A stretch of DNA of 56,963 nucleotides, the filler included, from Dugesia japonica (taxonomy: Eukaryota): the NCBI GenBank assembly GCA_001938525.1. It is 6 parts of 6 records of this genome, joined end to end, with 100 filler letters (N's around TTAATTAATTAA, not from the genome) between each part and the next. Parts side by side here need not be neighbours in the genome. Positions count along the whole stretch, not along the records: positions 1 to 8,950 come from MQRL01629266.1; 5 more parts are not named here. One strand, written 5' to 3'. The position numbers and the translations under genes are program-made. The notes beneath the pieces are model-generated. The model saw only the letters and a list, made by a program, of their open reading frames with translations, was not told the DNA's origin and did no database searches. Positions 1-8,950 of the stretch are shown in pieces. How positions within the stretch are numbered: position 1 is the first letter of the stretch; the number at the start of each line of letters is the position of its first letter.

Positions 1-484
1 GTTGCTTTGATTGCAACTGTCTGCATCTTAAGCCAGGTCTTTTGAATGCTGAGAAGGCAACATGAGAAGAAATGAAAGAAGTTATTGAGATAGACTATAC
101 GTTATAATAGCTTTATGTGTTCACGAAAATAAATCTTTTGTTAGGATAAATGAGCTTGTAAACTGTTGAGTCATGACTTGTAAAGTTAGCTAAACAACTA
201 CAATAAAGAAAATCACTNCAGCATGAGAAAATGAAACTCAAAGACGGGATTTTGNATAGTCCCACATGAACTCAGGGTAGATGTCACAATGCACGAGGCA
301 TTGTCAAATTTCTGCCGGTTTCAGGGTATCTATCCCTAGAAGATGTTAAAGTAGTGAATGCATAATGAAGGACAAATTAAAGAAGAAGAACCAAGGGAGA
401 GCCGAAATTCCACAAGGAAATATTAACAACGAAAACCTCAAAGCCCAACGATATTATAACTATTAAAATATAATTTATTAAAAA

Positions 485-826
485 CTAGTTATACCTGGCT
501 ACTCGTTGCTGTGGTTCAGTTTGGTTGAATGAAACAGATAAGAAAAGAGAATGAATACATTTCTAATATNNNNNNNNNNNNNNNNNNNNNNNNNNNNNNN
601 NNNNNNNNNNNNNNNNNNNGTTTTTGGAGTTTTTCGATTTTGAACAAATGGAAATTTACATTTTTATTTATATAGATAATGTAGGCATATTATAATATAG
701 TCGGTATATATGATCATGACTGAATTCGAATGCAACGTTGTGTCAAATTTTCAAGGCTATCAGTAAACAATTTTCGGAGTTTTTCGATTTTGAAAAAACG
801 AAAATTTACATTTTTATTTATATAGA
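485..826 (-). mobile_element. Short non-autonomous Helitron-like element (two 5' ends, at 676 and 826)
   Basis: The minus strand reads A|TCTATATAAATAAAAATGTAAATTT... at both 676 and 826 (621-677 is a near copy of 771-827). It ends ...GCAACGAGTAGCCAGGTATAACTAG|T at 485. This gives 5'-TC, 3'-CTAG and insertion between A and T. Confidence 0.6.
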
Positions 827-1863
827 TTGAAATGAATTTAATAAAAGAAATTGTAAAAATGAAAATAAAAATTTCATTAATAATGAAAATGTTCAAGTTT
901 TAAGAGTGTATTAAAAGGATTTTCTTTAATATTTTGTTAGAGATCCGAGTTTTTGACAATAGTCTTCTGCAGGGATTCACTTTTAATTTTAAGTATGAAA
1001 TTTAATATAAAAATATCAGTAATTAAAAATTTAATTAGAAGTTATTATTAAAAAGTGTTGTATAAAATAAAATTCCAAAAATAAAAGTAAAAAGAAATAA
1101 AAAANNAAAAAATTATTAATTAATACATATTTTTAAATTAAATTTTATGGATTATAAATTATTGTTTTATTTTGAATTTTATTTCCTACAAAATAAATTT
1201 TAAAAGTATTGAAACTATTTTTGTATTTACGCTTATTCAAATAAACTTTAAAAATCTATCAAATTATTTCATAGTCAATTAAAAATAATTAAAAAATGCA
1301 GAAAGGAAATATATATTTTAAACAGTTTAGATGGCTTTTTCTTCAAAATAACAGCATGATTGCATCTCATCTATTTGTTTTCATGGGAAAATTGGATTTA
1401 ATATTAATTTTGATTTAAACTGTAAAGTGTTGTTACAAGAATAAAATCTGCAAAAATTTCAAACAATTGAACTTTTCATCAGAAGAATAAAATAATAAGT
1501 TAATCTACAAAATATAAAATAAATATTTCGCCAAAAATGTTTTCGATTACTGTCTCATTAAAACTAATAGAGAATAACAATAATCGTTGGCGATTAATAA
1601 AAATAAATTACAAATACAAAAGAAATCCACTTTAAGAAAAAAGCAAATTATAAAAACAAAAGTAAACATTAGCCATTCACCGTAAAAAATCGAGATATCA
1701 ATTTTTTATACATACCAAAATAAAGCGATTCTAACGCTCACTCAGTGGACAAAATACCCATTTAAATACTTCATTTTACAACAAGAGCATAAAAGGTATG
1801 TTTAATACCCACTTTGAGCAGCGAAATTTAAATCTTATAAAAAGTAGGCATTAAATTAAAATT

Positions 1864-3561
1864 TCAGTTTAACACTTGGGTACTTTTTGATAATATATTA
1901 TGTACTATATTCACACCTTTTACTGATACACTTTGATGGCCCCAACCTGGCGTAAAGATCGATTCTTTAACAGGATACCATACTAATTCGTCTGGTTTCC
2001 ATTTATCTACAGAAGAATCACTAAATCTGTAAATTTCACCATCTAGTTCGGTGATAGTAAATGAGAAATGCTCAGGCATATTTTCAATTGCATAAATTTT
2101 CCACTTTTTTGTTTGAGGATCATACATAGAAACTTTACATGATTGAATTAAATAAAGTCGATCGCTAACAGCTATGAGCTTATAACATCCCCATATATTT
2201 TCTGGAATTGGTTTTATATAAGTCCATTGATTAATTAATGGATCGTATACTTCACTGGAACACAACCATTGTGTTAAAACCGCTCCATAATCTCCTGAAT
2301 TTCCACCACAAACATAAATTTTATCATTTAAAGTTGCTGCAGTTGATCTATTTCGTTTTGATAATAAAGGTGCTATGTGTACCCATCTATTGGTTTTAAT
2401 TGTATACCTTTCTACACTGGATAAAGTTTCCCAACCTTCTCGATGACCACCAATTGCATAAATCTTTTGGTTTAAAACCACTGAAGCAAAGAAAAACCGA
2501 CATTCTTGCATCGGGGCAGAAGGAGACCATTGTAAATTCAGCAGTGAAAATTTGAATACAGATGGAGTTGGTAAAAACTTTTCACATAAACCACCAAGCA
2601 TGTATAAATAATCATCAAGTACTACAGTTTCAAAAAATACTCGACCAGTTGGAATATTTGAGCATCGAGGAAGAATTGACCATGTGTCATCACGATTATT
2701 ATAAACTTTGATCTTCCGATAAGGTGANCAAAACATTCCACCCCCAAATACTAAAATGCATTGATGGGGTAAACGTGGTCTACTTAGATGATGTGCTTCT
2801 GGTAAAACTCTCATCCCTCTTTTACTACGTAAAATTTGTCGCTTGGCAAGTACTAACGTCATTTTAAGAGATTGTGGTAATTTTTTAACTAAACTGTTTT
2901 TTTCAATAGTATTTATTTCATTTAATGATAGCCTTGCCAACCTTAAACAATTTAATAATGATACTAGATATTTCTCCCGAATTATCAAATCATTTTCTGT
3001 CCACTTGATAACAGCATCGAAAAGTTGAATTTCATTTTGAACATTAACTCTGTCATCATCTAAAAATGTTTTCAGTTCTTCATAATTTAATTTTAAGAAG
3101 TCAACATATTTCGAAATTGCAGAAAAGTTTTCAAGCATATAAAGATGAATTTTTGTCATTACTGATAAATTCAGTTGCTTTGCTAATTTCCATGCATCCC
3201 AACAGTTTTCAATTTTAATCGTATTAATTAAAAACTGTTCACATGCTTCAAGCATAGAGTTGACATCAAACCGTTTAGCAATATCAATTAGTTTTTCTAC
3301 ATTTTGTCGAGTAACATCTACTTCTCCAATATGAGCATAGCGAAGTATTATTTCTAAATCCTTTGGTTGATCACAATCAAAATTCAATTTTCCATCTCTG
3401 CCAACGGATTGTAAAAGATTCCAAAACGCTTGACTTGCTGTAGCTAGTTTGAATGCATTTATCATAAGCTTTTGTGAACCATTCACATAAAGTTCTCTGG
3501 TAAGAAGCCAAGGCATGTTGAAATCTAAGAGGCAATTTGGATCTAAATTTTCATTGGACAT
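1864..3561 (-). CDS. Kelch-like protein (BTB-BACK-Kelch repeats), putative Cullin3 substrate adaptor; single exon
   Basis: 565-aa ORF with BTB (LEIILRYAHIGEVDVTRQNVEKLIDIAKRFDV..CEQFL), BACK (LNYEELKTFLDDDRVNVQNEIQLFDAVIKW) and repeated Kelch GG...Y...W motifs (LYMLGG, IYAIGG..SSVERY, IYVCGG..SEVYDP..NQW). Confidence 0.93.
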   Translation of the reverse strand: MSNENLDPNCLLDFNMPWLLTRELYVNGSQKLMINAFKLATASQAFWNLLQSVGRDGKLNFDCDQPKDLEIILRYAHIGEVDVTRQNVEKLIDIAKRFDVNSMLEACEQFLINTIKIENCWDAWKLAKQLNLSVMTKIHLYMLENFSAISKYVDFLKLNYEELKTFLDDDRVNVQNEIQLFDAVIKWTENDLIIREKYLVSLLNCLRLARLSLNEINTIEKNSLVKKLPQSLKMTLVLAKRQILRSKRGMRVLPEAHHLSRPRLPHQCILVFGGGMFXSPYRKIKVYNNRDDTWSILPRCSNIPTGRVFFETVVLDDYLYMLGGLCEKFLPTPSVFKFSLLNLQWSPSAPMQECRFFFASVVLNQKIYAIGGHREGWETLSSVERYTIKTNRWVHIAPLLSKRNRSTAATLNDKIYVCGGNSGDYGAVLTQWLCSSEVYDPLINQWTYIKPIPENIWGCYKLIAVSDRLYLIQSCKVSMYDPQTKKWKIYAIENMPEHFSFTITELDGEIYRFSDSSVDKWKPDELVWYPVKESIFTPGWGHQSVSVKGVNIVHNILSKSTQVLN

Positions 3562-3870
3562 GATAGAATACTTTTTCTGATGTAATTGTTTGATGGGTAT
3601 TAATATTTATTATTCATATAAATCAATATATTTTAATTTTAAACTCACATAAATTTTTATCGGAAATTTTCTCTGTTTAAATAAGGCCTAAATGGCTTCA
3701 CGGGCCATTTTTTATTTTGTAACATTATAATTGGCCGCACTTAAAATAAAAATTTTTTTTTTAATTTAATAAGTAATAAATATGCAAAATCAAAATAATT
3801 TTTTTATTTTTAAAAGAAAAAATTATATCAATATAAGTATTAGTATATCTACTTTTATAAACAAGTACAA

Positions 3871-4986
3871 TAGTAAAAGTACTCACATTAGGGGCTTAAA
3901 TCCCAAAACNAAGTTTTTTTAATTTCTTGAAAGAAAATAAAATATTTTAGTGACCATGACAGTATACCAAAAAAATTAGTTAAATCATAATTAATACAAT
4001 TGTGATGCAAAACAGCTAAAATAAATTAAGAAAAAACAGGATACTTTTTTACTATTCAGCTCACAATAAGACATTGAATTAAAATCATCTATTTAAATTT
4101 GCACATTATATCAAAGAAACACATCAATTTTCATTAATTAAAATTGTTTTACAAAAACAATNNNNNNNNNNNNNNNNNNNNNNNNGGTTCACATGCAGTA
4201 ATTAAATATATAAAATAAAAATAGTCAATATGATAGATTCTAGAATTATGTAATTAAAGTTATCAAGTAAAATGAAGTTTATTACGATGGATTTGTTGGA
4301 CAGGTTTTACAACTAAAACAACTTCTTAATTATGGTTTACTATATATTTTCTAAAAATGCATTAGTCAACTAAAATCTAAAAATATGTTTGTAAAGAGGT
4401 ATAAGGAGTTAAGTCTGTGTATTAAATCTATAGTCATTATGCATTATACCAAACATGTGCAACTTAGTCGTGACTGTTGGCCGGGAAATAAATATTAAAT
4501 AAAATCGCGGTCCTGACTTATAACTGGAATTTAAAAATAGTATTGAATAGAAACTTACGGAGAAATTTAGAAAATAATATTAGAAGTGTATCAACATTGT
4601 GGTGAATGATAGAGCTGTTGGGTTGGAACACATAATTTTAGTGCAAGAGAGCTAACAAAGCATCCCCAAATAATCCGACAATTATCAGAGAACAAACAGA
4701 CAAACGAGTAAAAATGGGTACGGGGCCAGATATTTTACACTATATTATTATTATTATTATTACATAATTATTATTATTATTAGTACAATTATTATATTAT
4801 TATTATCGGAACGAGAAAAATGAAAATTGGGNNNNNNNNNNNNNNNNNNNNNNNNNNNNNNNNNNNNNNNNNNNNNNNNNNGATTTGACTGCAATATTTG
4901 CAAATAAAGCCAAATCTCACAATTCAAAAGATATTAGTAAAAGATATTAGTAAAAGTACTCACATTAGGGGCTTAAATCCCAAAAC
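3871..4986 (+). repeat. 39-bp direct repeat pair (3871-3909 and 4948-4986)
   Basis: TAGTAAAAGTACTCACATTAGGGGCTTAAATCCCAAAAC occurs identically at both positions. Confidence 0.85.
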
Positions 4987-5088
4987 ATTAACAATAACAA
5001 TTTAACATACATTTATTCAATTTCATTCCTAAAATGTCAGGGATTTGATGTTAGAATTAGGGATTTGACTGCAATATTTGCAAATAAA

Positions 5089-5237
5089 GCCAAATCCCCC
5101 AATTCAAAACCCAAATCCCAAATCTCAAATTCTCCAAATCCCAAAACCCAAATCCCAAATCCCAACATCAAATCCCAAATTCCAACATCAAATCCCAAAT
5201 CCTCCAATTCCAAATACCAAATCCTCCAAATCCAAAT
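5089..5237 (+). repeat. Degenerate 7-mer tandem repeat (CCAAATC)n upstream of pPolB
   Basis: Run of ccaaatc/cccaaat variants. It accounts for the low-complexity first ~68 aa of ORF 5065 and for spurious ORF 5037-5276. Confidence 0.85.
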
Positions 5238-7025
5238 TAAAAATATAAATGTTAAAGTAAAAAATAAAATGAGCATATCATTAAATTTGTTCTTTAGAAA
5301 AATGCGTAGAACGTCAAGTAGAATACCAACTAGAATACTACCAACACCAAGTACGAGTAGTAGTGCAGCAGCAATGCAACCAAGTACTAGTAGTAGTGTA
5401 GTAGCAGTGCAAACACGAAGATTAAGTGTAGTAAAAAGTAATAAAACATTTCAATGTAATCATTGTAAGAAATGGTTTAAGAGCAATGTAGGTCTTGGAA
5501 ATCATATTAAATCAAGAACTTGTGCAAACCCATTATTACCAAGAATTAAATGTCCAAAACCTGGATGTTACAGAACATTCGCAACAGAAACAGTTTTACA
5601 AAATCATTTAAATACTTCCAGATGTGGTGATCAAACAATTGTCTCCTTACACTGTGAACTTTGCAATAAAAAATTTAAATATCAAAGTCATGCAAGAGCT
5701 CATTATAATTCTGCTAAACATAAAGAAAAACAAAATATAAATGCATTCGGTGAATTACCACAAGATGAAGCAATTTTGTATGAGCCTGAAGTTCGTGATA
5801 TTTTTAGAATGTATAATAATAAGTTTAAAATTATTTATTATATAGGAAGCAGAGTTGGTTTTACAAAAGAAGTTGAAAAAATATTTCCACAAGATATTCA
5901 AGATATTAAAATATTTAAATCAGAAATTGAAGAAATTGTCAGAAAGTATTTTAACTTTGCTAAAAAAATGATTATAGATATTACAGTAAAATGTAATTAT
6001 GAAAAAATGATAAATAATCATTTAGAGACAAAAGTATTTAAATCATATTGTGAAAATAAAAAATATAATAGAATTATAATGGAAAGTGAAATTGAAAAAA
6101 ACTTAACCGATGTGCTTACTCATTTAGAAAATAACATTCAAGATGCAGAAAAAGAAGGTTCTGGATGGTCACTAAAAAATATTATTGAATTTACATTTAC
6201 ATGTCATAAATATCAATCTTTAGCTGGGGCAACATATCAAAAGTTGCCTTATAGAAAACCAGGAGTTATTAACATTGAAAATAGAGACAATAAATGTTTC
6301 TTGTATTCAATCTTAGCCCACAAATATAATAATTTTACACATCCAACAGATGTAAATAATTATATCCCTCATTTAGAAGAATTAAATTATGAAGGACTAC
6401 ATTTTCCAATGTGTATTTGTGATATTCATAAATTTGAAGAAATAAATAATTGGAAAATAAATGTATTTTCAGTTAACACAACTAAAGAACTTCAACCATT
6501 ATACATTTCACATCTCACCCAAAAACCAAATCCAGAAGAAAAGATGTGTAATTTATTAATATATAAAGAGCATTACATTTTATGTAGAGATATTAATGTA
6601 TTTTTTGCAACAAATGGAAATCAAAACCATGTATGTTTGAGATGCATGAATTGTTATTCAAGTGAAGAGGTTTTAAAAAATCATCAAGAACTTTGCGTTC
6701 ACCATAAACCTAATAATATTAGATTTCCAAAAGAAGATTATTATAAATTCAATAAATTTTATCAAAAAAATAAAGTGCCATTTTATATTGTTGGACAGAT
6801 AATAAAACTAATAAACAAAAAAGTTTAGCTTTAGGAATTTATGTTAAATCTGATTACCCTGAATTATTAGAAAGTAAATACTACGAATTCTCAGGAGAAA
6901 ATACTCATCAACAAATGTTTAAGTTTTTAGATGACATAAATGAAAAAATAAATTTTATTAAAAATGATTTAACATTAAAATATTACATGGGAAGAGATCA
7001 CCCAGAATTCGATCCAAATATTAAA

Positions 7026-7118
7026 TGTAGATATTGTGATAATGATGTTAAAGATCCAGTAATTGATCACAATCATTATAATGGCAACTTTCGTGGATGG
7101 ACATGTAGAGAATGCAAT
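7026..7118 (+). other. HNH / endonuclease VII-like domain inserted in the pPolB exonuclease domain
   Basis: CRYC...VIDHNHYNGNFRGWTCRECN lies between ExoI and ExoII. Confidence 0.85.
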
Positions 7119-8771
7119 TTAAATGATAAATCTTCTGGTTATAATTTATTTATTCCATTTTATTTTCATAATTTATCGGGATATGATTCACATTTATTTT
7201 TTAGGGAATTATTAAAAAATTCTCCAGGAAAAGTGAAAAAAATAATTCCACACAAGTCAGAAAGTTACATTTCATTCCAATATGAAAATATTAGATTTCT
7301 CGATTTAAATAGATTAATACCATTTACTCCAGTAGAAAAAATGGGGGAATTATTAACACAATCCAACAATTTTCCAATATTAAGATCATTTGATTTAAGA
7401 CCTAAAAAAGCATTATTCCCTTATGAATATGTTGTAGGGGAGAATATCGATGAAGTTGAAAAATTATTAAAAAGTAAAAAAATTCCTGAGAAAGAAATAT
7501 TCTTCAATACATTAAAACAAAAAGATATAACTTTTAAAGATTATGTAAAATTTTTAAAAGAATATTTTAAATTTAATAACATGCATGAATACATGCTTCA
7601 TTATATGAAGTTAGATGTTTTAATTCTAGCAGATTATATTGAAGATTTCAGAAACAAATGTATGAATGGAATTTTTAAATTAGATCCATGTTATTCTTAT
7701 TCAATGCCTGGATATGCTTGGGAAGTTGGAAATTATTATTCAGAGGTAAAATTAAAATATATAAAATCAGAAACCTATGACACATCTTTAAGAAATGAAA
7801 AAGGTATTCGCGGTGGCTTATCATCTGAATTAAGTGATAGACAAGTATTTGCACACAATAAAACTAAAAATCCAAATTTTAAACAAATAAATAAAGCACA
7901 ACTTGATGAATTCCTTAAAATGTTGAAGGAAGGAAAAAATCTTCCAGAAGATTCATTTGAAGATATATTTATAAAATATATTGATGAAAATAGTTTATAT
8001 GCAAGCTGTATGACAATGCCGCTTCCAACAGGAGAGATTATTGAGTGCAGTGAGTTAACATATGAAAAACCAACAGAATTTAAAAATTATATTTATGAAG
8101 TGGATTTAGATTATCCACCAGATATCCACGAGAAAACTAGATACTTACCATTAGCCCCAGATAGATTAAATATTACAGAAGATATGTTAAGTAATTATCA
8201 GAAAAGTTTTAAAAGGAAATTAGGAAAACAAAATATAAAACTTACACTAAATCAATTCGATAAAAAGAATTATATAACACTAGGATCAACTTTAGATTTA
8301 TATCTTGAGTTGGGTATGAAAATTAAAACAATACATAAAAAATATGAAATGGAAGTTAAACCATGGTTTAGAGAATATGTTTATAAATTAATAGCTTTGA
8401 GAAGAGAAGCCAAAGCAAATAATGATGCATCAGGTGATCATATTTATAAATTAATGTTAAATGCTTATTATGGAAAAACCCTCGAAAATATTAGAAATCG
8501 ATGTGATGTGGAAATTGTGGATAATGATAGAGATTACCAAAAATTTGCATCAAAATTGACATTTAAATCCAGTAAAGTATTTACATATAATAATGAATCT
8601 GAAGCTGAAATAGCAGCAATGCATATGACTAAATCAAATTTATATTACAATAAATTCCCCTATATTGGATTTACTATTTTAGAGCATGCGAAATATGTAA
8701 TGTATGAATTTGTATATAAACAATTAGATCCATTAGTTGGACAAGGAAATTACAGATTACTTTATACGGAT

Positions 8772-8950
8772 AGTGTAACAAAAGATACTCCAATAATTCT
8801 TAAGAGAAATAATAAAGTTGAAATAATAAAGATTTCAGAAATTTCTAAAGATTTTAAAGAAAGAAATGATGGAAAAGAATATGCAGAAATAGAAAATTAT
8901 GAAATATGGACCAAAAGTGGATGGGTAAAATTAAAGAAAGTAATTAAACA
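8772..8950 (+). mobile_element. Intein (N-terminal splicing region) inserted at the Pol-c site YTD/TDS of pPolB; remainder missing at the gap
   Basis: After LLYTD the expected TDS is replaced in frame by SVTKDTPIILKRNNKVEIIKISEI...YEIWTKSGWVKLKKVIK. This has Ser1 and a block-A pattern, and resembles Pol-c inteins of archaeal and giant-virus PolBs. Confidence 0.85.

What the first reader, a model, noticed from the sequence alone, without database searches (positions are those of the whole stretch)
8757..8950. Intein in the catalytic motif C of a Polinton/Maverick protein-primed DNA polymerase
Seen: after intact motifs A (DENSLY) and B (KLMLNAYYGK), motif C reads RLLYTD. At nt 8772 the frame then switches to SVTKDTPIILKRNNKVEIIKISEISKDF...EYAEIENYEIWTKSGWVKLKKVIK(H/Q) instead of the invariant TDS. 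Known: YxD/TDS is the Pol-c intein insertion site of archaeal and giant-virus (e.g. mimivirus) family-B polymerases. Those inteins start with Ser (SVxxDTP-hydrophobic), have an ExWTxxGWxxxxxVxxH-like segment before block B, and use the Thr of TDS as the +1 nucleophile. Inteins are known from prokaryotes, microbial eukaryotes and viruses; animals are known only for the related Hint domains. Inference: this is a protein-splicing element in a protein-primed PolB of an endogenous virus-like element in an apparently animal genome. It may have been acquired from a large DNA virus, and it would make replication depend on splicing. Only ~60 aa are visible, and I cannot confirm novelty without a search.
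Basis: partly seen in the sequence, partly recalled or inferred. Interest (0 to 1): 0.95.

Follow-up and report, generated by a model that had tools for sequence, protein, structure and literature searches.

The report
Intein start inside Maverick polymerase motif C
The DNA polymerase gene of a virus-like mobile element, probably sitting in an animal genome, is interrupted in its catalytic motif by what looks like the first 59 residues of a self-splicing protein element (intein); the literature I could search says animal genomes have none, but the rest of it lies beyond the sequence piece.

Summary
One open frame runs through polymerase motifs A and B and reads RLLYTD at 8754-8771. From 8772 it carries 59 more codons to the edge. 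There is no frame change at 8772, only a change of content.

Among 131 relatives with a recognisable motif C, all continue with T-D-S/G/C. The window matches them up to the Asp and not after. The tail scores like shuffled sequence against the relatives' downstream profile, so it is not diverged polymerase. It is coding, so it is not an intron read-through.

It starts with Ser at the published pol-c intein site (YxD|TDS). It matches NCBIfam intein_Nterm in register (E 1.6e-4, just under the cut-off, model cut by the edge). Its fold model retrieves mainly inteins and intein-bearing viral proteins, none of them significant alone.

Best reading: the N-terminal part of a class-1 intein in a Polinton/Maverick protein-primed polymerase (about 0.75). 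Block B, the C-terminal His-Asn, the +1 Thr and any endonuclease are unseen.

An animal host is likely but unproven. An origin from giant viruses is only hinted at. I found no prior report in the papers I could search.

The parts
8772..8950 (+). N-terminal 59 codons (plus 2 bases) of an intein-like Hint domain, in frame with the polymerase and cut off by the edge of the piece
   Evidence: Ser at position 1. TIGR01445 intein_Nterm E 1.6e-4, 22.6 bits against a cut-off of 24.5, query 2-55 on model 2-50 of 83. Nine control pieces of the same gene give no intein hit. Codon log-odds +18.3, against -19.8 +/- 9.4 for intergenic windows. AF2 model pLDDT 71.6 with hairpin-helix-hairpin. Foldseek PDB ranks 1-5 are all inteins. 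BFVD top hits are intein-bearing viral proteins. Scores 1.4 bits, no better than shuffles, against the relatives' post-motif-C profile.
8754..8771 (+). N-extein half of polymerase motif C (RLLYTD), ending in the first catalytic Asp
   Evidence: Matches the relatives' columns up to the Asp. Most of the 150 listed alignments end at or within two residues of this point.
5269..8950 (+). [quoted passage not shown] It lies in two reading frames with one interruption and is cut off at the 3' edge. The start given is the first ATG.
   Evidence: PF03175 E 6.1e-18. 8421 relatives at E<=1e-3, best 45% identity. The upstream frame matches the N-terminal half of 81 of the 150 relatives. First ATG.
5644..6801 (+). 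N-terminal region of the polymerase that is colinear with the relatives (the terminal-protein and vOTU part in the published architecture), preceded by C2H2 fingers
   Evidence: phmmer against the 150 relatives, best E 5.5e-44. C2H2 finger families. Architecture as in PMC11161782; the TP and vOTU folds themselves were not tested here.
7020..7121 (+). His-Me finger (Endonuclease VII / HNH-like) domain just before the exonuclease domain
   Evidence: PF02945 E 5e-6, above its cut-off. PHROG endonuclease VII families. Present in 28 of the 36 longest relatives, with invariant Cys/His columns.
7158..8717 (+). Exonuclease and polymerase core (DNA_pol_B_2), with motifs A and B intact
   Evidence: PF03175 envelope. 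Motifs read.
1864..3561 (-). Neighbouring intact BTB-BACK-Kelch (KLHL-like) gene with one ambiguous base. It is either a host gene or cargo.
   Evidence: Pfam BTB, BACK and Kelch. A 96%-identical protein exists in the collection. All named relatives are animal: cestode, fishes, nematode, fly, tardigrade, tunicate.

Best explanation
Bases 8772-8950 encode the N-terminal part (block A region) of a class-1 intein. It is inserted in frame at the 'pol-c' site of family-B polymerases, between the first Asp and the Thr of motif C (Y-x-D | T-D-S). The host gene is the protein-primed polymerase of a Polinton/Maverick-type element.

Shown:
- The polymerase homology ends exactly there.
- The insert is coding and begins with the Ser nucleophile.
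- It resembles intein N-termini in sequence and in predicted fold.

Inferred from the established chemistry of class-1 inteins:
- The polymerase is made as a precursor whose catalytic motif C is split.
- Ser1 attacks the Asp-Ser bond (N-O shift).
- The +1 Thr expected after the intein takes over the N-extein.
- The terminal Asn cyclises and the peptide bond re-forms, giving a continuous Y-T-D-T-D-S motif.
- Polymerase activity, and so replication of the element, would then wait on splicing.

If the unseen part holds a homing endonuclease, intein-less copies of the polymerase gene would be its targets.
For: - Junction: the window follows the relatives through L-L-Y-T-D and shares none of the next seven residues. 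Most of the 150 listed alignments end at or within two residues of it.
- Not polymerase: the tail scores 1.4 bits against a profile of 127 relatives' post-motif-C segments. Shuffles score 1.3 +/- 1.3 and 205 of 500 reach it. The relatives themselves score 41-148 bits.
- Coding: 0 stops in frame against 8 and 9 in the other two forward frames. Codon log-odds is +18.3, like polymerase windows (20.2 +/- 5.3) and unlike intergenic windows (maximum 2.9). Open 59-codon windows are 3 of 3582 in non-genic DNA.
- Intein likeness: TIGR01445 intein_Nterm E 1.6e-4, in register from residue 2 to model position 2, with the model cut at 50 of 83 by the edge. Nine same-size control pieces gave no intein hit; their best hit of any kind was E 0.019. 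phmmer lists a TFIIB mini-intein chain at E 2.6.
- Fold: the AF2 model (pLDDT 71.6) gives Foldseek PDB ranks 1-5 and 12 of 46 hits as inteins, including three PolB inteins. BFVD top hits are an iridovirus topoisomerase II (E 0.024, prob 1.0), Megavirus and phycodnavirus PolB fragments, terminases and DnaB, all classic intein hosts (host list in PMC5784728).
- Site: YGD|TDS with Ser1, a terminal Asn and Thr+1 is the published pol-c allele (PMC549080).
Against: - Only 59 residues are visible. Block B (TxxH), blocks F and G, the terminal His-Asn, the +1 residue and the C-extein are all beyond the edge.
- The TIGR01445 score is below its curated cut-off.
- Pfam Hint and intein models give nothing.
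- No Foldseek match is significant on its own: best E 0.76 in PDB and 0.024 in BFVD.
- No homologue of the tail turned up in two word-based searches of 5.8 billion proteins, among the 150 polymerase relatives, in prokaryotic genomes or in phages.
- The assembly is a draft with N-runs, so a mis-join cannot be excluded from the sequence alone.
Confidence: 0.75

Rival explanations
1. Intein-derived but dead or incomplete. The insert began as an intein at pol-c, but this copy is a relic, truncated or mutated downstream, and the polymerase copy is a non-functional remnant.
For: The polymerase gene already carries one interruption between its two reading frames. Nothing beyond residue 59 of the insert is visible. 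No other copy with the insert was found among protein relatives.
Against: Both long frames and the 59 insert codons are free of stops, with normal codon usage. Ser1 and the block-A pattern are kept.
Confidence: 0.12
2. An unrelated in-frame coding insertion, gene fusion or assembly chimera at 8772 that only resembles an intein start by chance.
For: All intein-specific scores are below the usual thresholds. Pfam is silent. The scaffold has gaps, with duplicated blocks beside them.
Against: The junction falls on the exact residue of the known pol-c site, in frame, with Ser first. The TIGR01445 match starts in register at that residue, while nine controls give nothing. Inteins, which I take to be a small minority of PDB chains, fill the top Foldseek ranks. 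Composition and codon usage match the flanking gene.
Confidence: 0.08
3. Read-through into a spliceosomal intron that happens to begin right after the Asp codon.
For: The host is probably a eukaryote with introns. GT dinucleotides lie within a few bases of the junction.
Against: The tail has coding codon usage and position-specific composition, and no stops in frame against 8 and 9 in the other frames. Only 0.08% of non-genic 59-codon windows are open. It also matches an intein model.
Confidence: 0.02
4. A strongly diverged polymerase C-terminus with a degenerate motif C (Y-T-D-S read as a shortened D-T-D-S).
For: BLAST and phmmer extend a few alignments 20-40 residues past the motif at low similarity.
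Against: The profile of 127 relatives' downstream segments scores the tail like shuffled sequence, 1.4 bits against 41-148 bits for the relatives. The second catalytic Asp would be missing.
Confidence: 0.02

Closest known systems
pol-c allele inteins of family-B DNA polymerases (archaeal PolB; Mimivirus PolB, Ogata et al. 2005, PMC549080)
   Same: The insertion point is between the Asp and the Thr of Y-x-D|T-D-S. The first residue is Ser. The expected +1 nucleophile is Thr. Foldseek lists PolB inteins (PolB16 OarG, KOD 'intein homing endonuclease II', the N. equitans split intein) and Megavirus PolB fragments among its top hits.
   Different: The extein here is a protein-primed PolB of Polinton/Maverick type, not an RNA-primed replicative PolB. 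The host is probably an animal genome. Only the first 59 residues are seen. No significant sequence similarity to any known intein protein was obtained.
Inteins of nucleocytoplasmic large DNA viruses (phycodnavirus, iridovirus, mimivirus polymerases, RNR, helicases, topoisomerase; Green et al. 2018, PMC5784728)
   Same: A Hint-type insertion in a replication protein of a eukaryotic DNA virus or virus-like element. The best structural matches are to such proteins.
   Different: That survey lists no Polinton or pPolB case and states that inteins are absent from metazoan genomes.
HNH and VSR nuclease domains inside Polinton pPolB2 (Jeong et al. 2023, PMC10748475), read as traces of intein invasions by Krupovic et al. 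2024 (PMC11161782)
   Same: Extra domains typical of mobile elements inside Polinton polymerases. This gene also has the HNH-like domain, at 7020-7121.
   Different: Those are nuclease domains that stay in the mature protein, lie elsewhere in it and have no Hint part. Here the insert is the Hint part itself, at motif C.
Hedgehog/Hint autoprocessing domains of animals
   Same: The same fold superfamily, and the only Hint relatives accepted in animals (PMC5784728).
   Different: Those are C-terminal domains that cleave and attach cholesterol. They are not insertions that are spliced out of a host protein. No Pfam Hint model matches the tail.

Membership tests
Class-1 intein (Hint protein-splicing domain) | In-frame insertion in a conserved host-protein motif, with N-extein homology ending at the junction | tested here: met
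   homology to 131 relatives stops at the Asp of motif C, and the tail does not match their downstream profile.
Class-1 intein (Hint protein-splicing domain) | Cys or Ser nucleophile as first residue | tested here: met
   Ser encoded at 8772-8774.
Class-1 intein (Hint protein-splicing domain) | Block A / N-terminal splicing region matches an intein profile | tested here: inconclusive
   TIGR01445 E 1.6e-4 at 22.6 bits, below the 24.5-bit cut-off, with only 50 of 83 model positions available. Nine controls are clean. Pfam gives no hit.
Class-1 intein (Hint protein-splicing domain) | Block B (TxxH) | not testable with these tools
   It lies beyond the edge at 8950. The continuation was not fetched (see referred steps).
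Class-1 intein (Hint protein-splicing domain) | C-terminal blocks F and G ending in His-Asn (or Gln), followed by a +1 Cys, Ser or Thr and the C-extein | not testable with these tools
   Beyond the edge.
Class-1 intein (Hint protein-splicing domain) | Hint fold | tested here: inconclusive
   A partial model (59 aa, pLDDT 71.6) retrieves inteins at PDB ranks 1-5 and as 12 of 46 hits, all with E >= 0.76. BFVD best E 0.024, prob 1.0.
Class-1 intein (Hint protein-splicing domain) | Protein splicing occurs | not testable with these tools
   No expression or proteome data are at hand.
pol-c intein allele of family-B polymerases | Insertion exactly between Y-x-D and T-D-S | tested here: inconclusive
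   The N side is met (Y-T-D then Ser). The C side (T-D-S after the intein) is unseen.
pol-c intein allele of family-B polymerases | Closer to pol-c inteins than to inteins at other sites | tested here: inconclusive
   Foldseek lists PolB inteins and Megavirus PolB fragments (31-32% identity over 74 columns). It also lists TFIIB, RadA, topoisomerase and terminase inteins at similar scores.
Polinton/Maverick protein-primed PolB | DNA_pol_B_2 core with exonuclease and polymerase motifs | tested here: met
   PF03175 65.4 bits against a cut-off of 25.8. Motifs A and B read.
Polinton/Maverick protein-primed PolB | Long N-terminal extension (TP and vOTU region) colinear with that of Polinton polymerases | tested here: met
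   The upstream frame matches the N-terminal half of 81 of 150 relatives, best E 5.5e-44. Architecture as in PMC11161782. The TP and vOTU folds themselves were not modelled.
Polinton/Maverick element | Integrase, capsid proteins, packaging ATPase, protease and terminal inverted repeats | not testable with these tools
   None lies in the 8.9 kb piece. The element, if complete, continues beyond 8950.
Animal (metazoan) nuclear genome as host | Flanking genes of clear animal origin on the same contiguous sequence | tested here: inconclusive
   The named relatives of the BTB-BACK-Kelch neighbour are all animal, at no more than 28% identity. A spider protein is among the polymerase relatives. Two N-runs separate the neighbour from the polymerase gene.

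The most novel reading that the evidence does not exclude
A complete, splicing-competent pol-c-type intein, related to those of giant-virus polymerases, sits in the protein-primed polymerase of a Maverick integrated in an animal genome. That would be the first intein in a metazoan nuclear genome and the first in a protein-primed PolB. It would point to intein traffic between giant viruses and Polinton-like viruses, with the many intein-less Maverick copies in a genome as possible homing targets.
Probability: 0.35. Interest if true: 0.8.

Novelty: new member of a known kind. Interest (0 to 1): 0.62.

Why it matters
Inteins are described from microbes and from viruses of microbes and invertebrates. 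A 2018 survey states that they are absent from metazoan genomes and uses that absence as the rationale for intein-targeted antimicrobials (PMC5784728). A real intein in a Maverick polymerase would do three things:
- extend the pol-c intein allele to protein-primed polymerases;
- give direct support to the recent guess that the nuclease domains in Polinton polymerases are left over from intein invasions (PMC11161782);
- place a protein-splicing element inside an animal genome, by way of an endogenous virus-like element.

It would also add a post-translational step to how such elements make an active polymerase.

The limits are plain. Only 59 residues are visible and the host is unverified. An older description that I could not read (Kapitonov and Jurka 2006, not held) might already mention such a case.

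Tried and rejected
- Pfam on the tail: no family, even at E <= 10.
- phmmer of the tail against PDB sequences: no significant hit. One TFIIB mini-intein chain appears at E 2.6.
- PHROGs: one unnamed family at E 0.028.
- Two word-based searches of the 5.8-billion-protein collection restricted to the tail (candidate lengths 373-1186 aa and 116-368 aa): nothing.
- phmmer of the tail against the 150 best polymerase relatives: nothing.
- Tail against prokaryotic genomes (search for related loci): 304 pattern matches, none confirmed.
- tblastn against phage records: no match.
- NCBIfam and Pfam scans of the 36 longest relatives for inteins: none.
- Exact look-up of the window's two complete ORF products: not in the collection, so the source could not be named that way.
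- Cluster look-ups for names: only a spider protein and a mis-binned 'cyanobacterial' MAG protein carry names.
- Short open stretches outside the genes: no Pfam hits.
- Rfam and tRNA scans: nothing.
- Literature: no paper in the held library reports a Hint intein in a Polinton, Maverick or protein-primed PolB. Kapitonov and Jurka 2006 is not held.

Rejected readings:
- diverged polymerase tail;
- intron read-through.

Steps not done:
The two frames were searched apart.
- I filled no N-runs.
- I met no contig that I took for human.

Full report
**What is in the piece**

The piece (1-8950) is AT-rich, with GC 16-35%. It is a draft assembly with N-runs at 570-619, 4162-4185 and 4832-4881, plus single Ns. 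I filled none of them.

It holds two genes.

- On the minus strand, 1864-3561 is an intact BTB-BACK-Kelch gene.

The evidence for the polymerase:
- PF03175 at E 6.1e-18.
- 8421 relatives at E <= 1e-3 in the 1.84-billion-protein library. The best is 45% identical and most are 31-38% identical.

The gene lies in two reading frames with one interruption. The upstream frame ends in a stop and the rest continues in another frame. The upstream frame matches the N-terminal half of 81 of the 150 listed relatives, best E 5.5e-44. In those relatives the two halves form a single polypeptide of about 1100-1400 residues. That is the architecture published for Polinton polymerases (PMC11161782).

I cannot say whether the interruption is a short intron or a lesion.

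**Checking the observation**

It reads RLLYTD at 8754-8771 and then SVTKDTP... from 8772 to the edge. There is no change of frame at 8772.

Of the 150 relatives, 131 have a recognisable motif C with both flanks. These were selected by the D-T-D-S/G/C pattern, so those columns are fixed by construction.
- The window shares the residues before the junction. The shares of relatives with the window's residue are 0.15, 0.87, 0.70, 0.40, 0.77 and 1.00.
- It shares none of the seven residues after it.
- Most of the 150 listed alignments end at or within two residues of the junction.

**What the tail is not**

It is not diverged polymerase. I built a profile from the 100 residues after motif C of 127 relatives.
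- The tail scores 1.4 bits against it.
- Shuffles of the tail score 1.3 +/- 1.3 bits, and 205 of 500 reach the real score.
- The relatives themselves score 41-148 bits.

It is not noncoding or an intron read-through.
- There are 0 stops in frame, against 8 and 9 in the other two forward frames.
- The codon log-odds (coding against intergenic model) is +18.3. Polymerase windows score 20.2 +/- 5.3. Intergenic windows, taking the best of three frames, score -19.8 +/- 9.4 with a maximum of 2.9.
- Only 3 of 3582 non-genic 59-codon windows of this piece are open.

**What the tail is like**

Sequence evidence:
- NCBIfam TIGR01445 (intein N-terminal splicing region) matches the 59 residues at E 1.6e-4 and 22.6 bits. 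The curated cut-off is 24.5 bits.
- The match runs from query residues 2-55 onto model positions 2-50 of 83. It is therefore in register with the Ser at the junction, and it is cut short by the edge.
- Nine other 59-residue pieces of the same gene give no intein hit. Their best hit of any kind is E 0.019.

Structural evidence:
- An AlphaFold2 model from the single sequence reaches pLDDT 71.6. It shows hairpin 7-20, helix 21-30 and hairpin 44-53.
- Foldseek against the PDB gives no significant E-value (best 0.76). Even so, ranks 1-5 and 12 of the 46 listed hits are inteins. They include the PolB16 OarG intein, the KOD polymerase 'intein homing endonuclease II' and the Nanoarchaeum split PolB intein.
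- Foldseek against predicted viral structures puts an iridovirus topoisomerase II first (E 0.024, prob 1.0). Next come Megavirus PolB fragments (31-32% identity over 74 columns), a Pandoravirus and a phycodnavirus PolB fragment, terminases and DnaB. These are all classic intein hosts (PMC5784728).

The site:
- It is the published pol-c allele, YGD|TDS, with a first Ser, a last Asn and a +1 Thr (PMC549080).

Each line is weak alone. Together with the exact junction they make an intein N-terminus the best reading by far.

**What remains unseen**

- Block B, the C-terminal blocks, the +1 residue, any homing endonuclease and the polymerase C-terminus all lie beyond 8950.
- No close relative of the tail exists in the searches open to me.
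- None of the 36 longest polymerase relatives hits an intein family. Among the relatives sampled, the intein-less state is therefore the rule.

**Mechanism (inferred)**

The polymerase would be made as a precursor with motif C split by the intein. Splicing would follow the standard path: N-O shift at Ser1, transesterification to the +1 Thr, Asn cyclisation, then O-N shift. That would restore a continuous motif C and with it polymerase activity.

**Host and origin**

- All named relatives of the Kelch neighbour are animal proteins, at no more than 28% identity. An unnamed protein is 96% identical.
- One polymerase relative is from a spider.
- Two N-runs lie between the neighbour and the polymerase gene, so their linkage rests on scaffolding.
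- I rate an animal host at about 0.7.
- Apart from the non-significant Megavirus alignments, an origin from a giant virus is untested.

**Literature**

- No paper in the held library reports a Hint intein in a Polinton or protein-primed PolB.
- Jeong et al. 2023 describe HNH and VSR nuclease domains in Polinton pPolB2. Krupovic et al. 2024 suggest that these stem from intein invasions.
- Green et al. 2018 state that inteins are absent from metazoan genomes.
- I have an unverifiable recollection that the first Polinton paper (Kapitonov and Jurka 2006) may mention an intein. It is not held, so novelty is provisional.

I did not fetch the continuation of this scaffold or other DNA copies of the element by look-up or pattern.

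1. Earlier I also recalled motif-C strings of other polymerases, as mental comparators.
3. The alignment tool printed a consensus line.

Noticed in passing
window 5105-5237 (partner arm 5040-5068): An array of about 19 copies of a CAAATCC-like heptamer lies directly upstream of the first ATG of the polymerase gene. An inverted partner lies just before it. It could be a subterminal repeat of the element or a promoter-region repeat.
   Followed up: no
window 621-677/771-827; 3871-3909/4948-4986; 4882-4929/5062-5109: Near-identical 39-57 nt blocks sit right beside N-runs or single Ns. They are either duplications at draft-assembly gap edges or real repeats near the end of the element. Two N-runs (4162-4185, 4832-4881) separate the Kelch gene from the polymerase gene.
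   Followed up: partly
window 7020-7121: A His-Me finger (Endonuclease VII / HNH-like) domain lies just before the exonuclease domain. It is shared by 28 of the 36 longest relatives, with invariant Cys/His columns. It recalls the HNH domain reported in nematode and oomycete Polinton pPolB2 (PMC10748475).
   Followed up: partly
window about 5440-5730: Three or four C2H2 zinc fingers (zf-met / JAZ type) sit at the N-terminus of the polymerase. Similar fingers occur in 4 of the 36 longest relatives.
   Followed up: no
window 1864-3561 (-): An intact, intron-free BTB-BACK-Kelch gene has a 96%-identical unnamed protein in the collection and only distant named relatives, all animal. It is unclear whether it is a host gene or cargo of the element.
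   Followed up: partly
P0009 (relative of the polymerase): A Polinton-type polymerase fragment is deposited as a protein of a 'Cyanobacteria bacterium' MAG. This is most likely eukaryotic DNA mis-binned into a bacterial genome.
   Followed up: no
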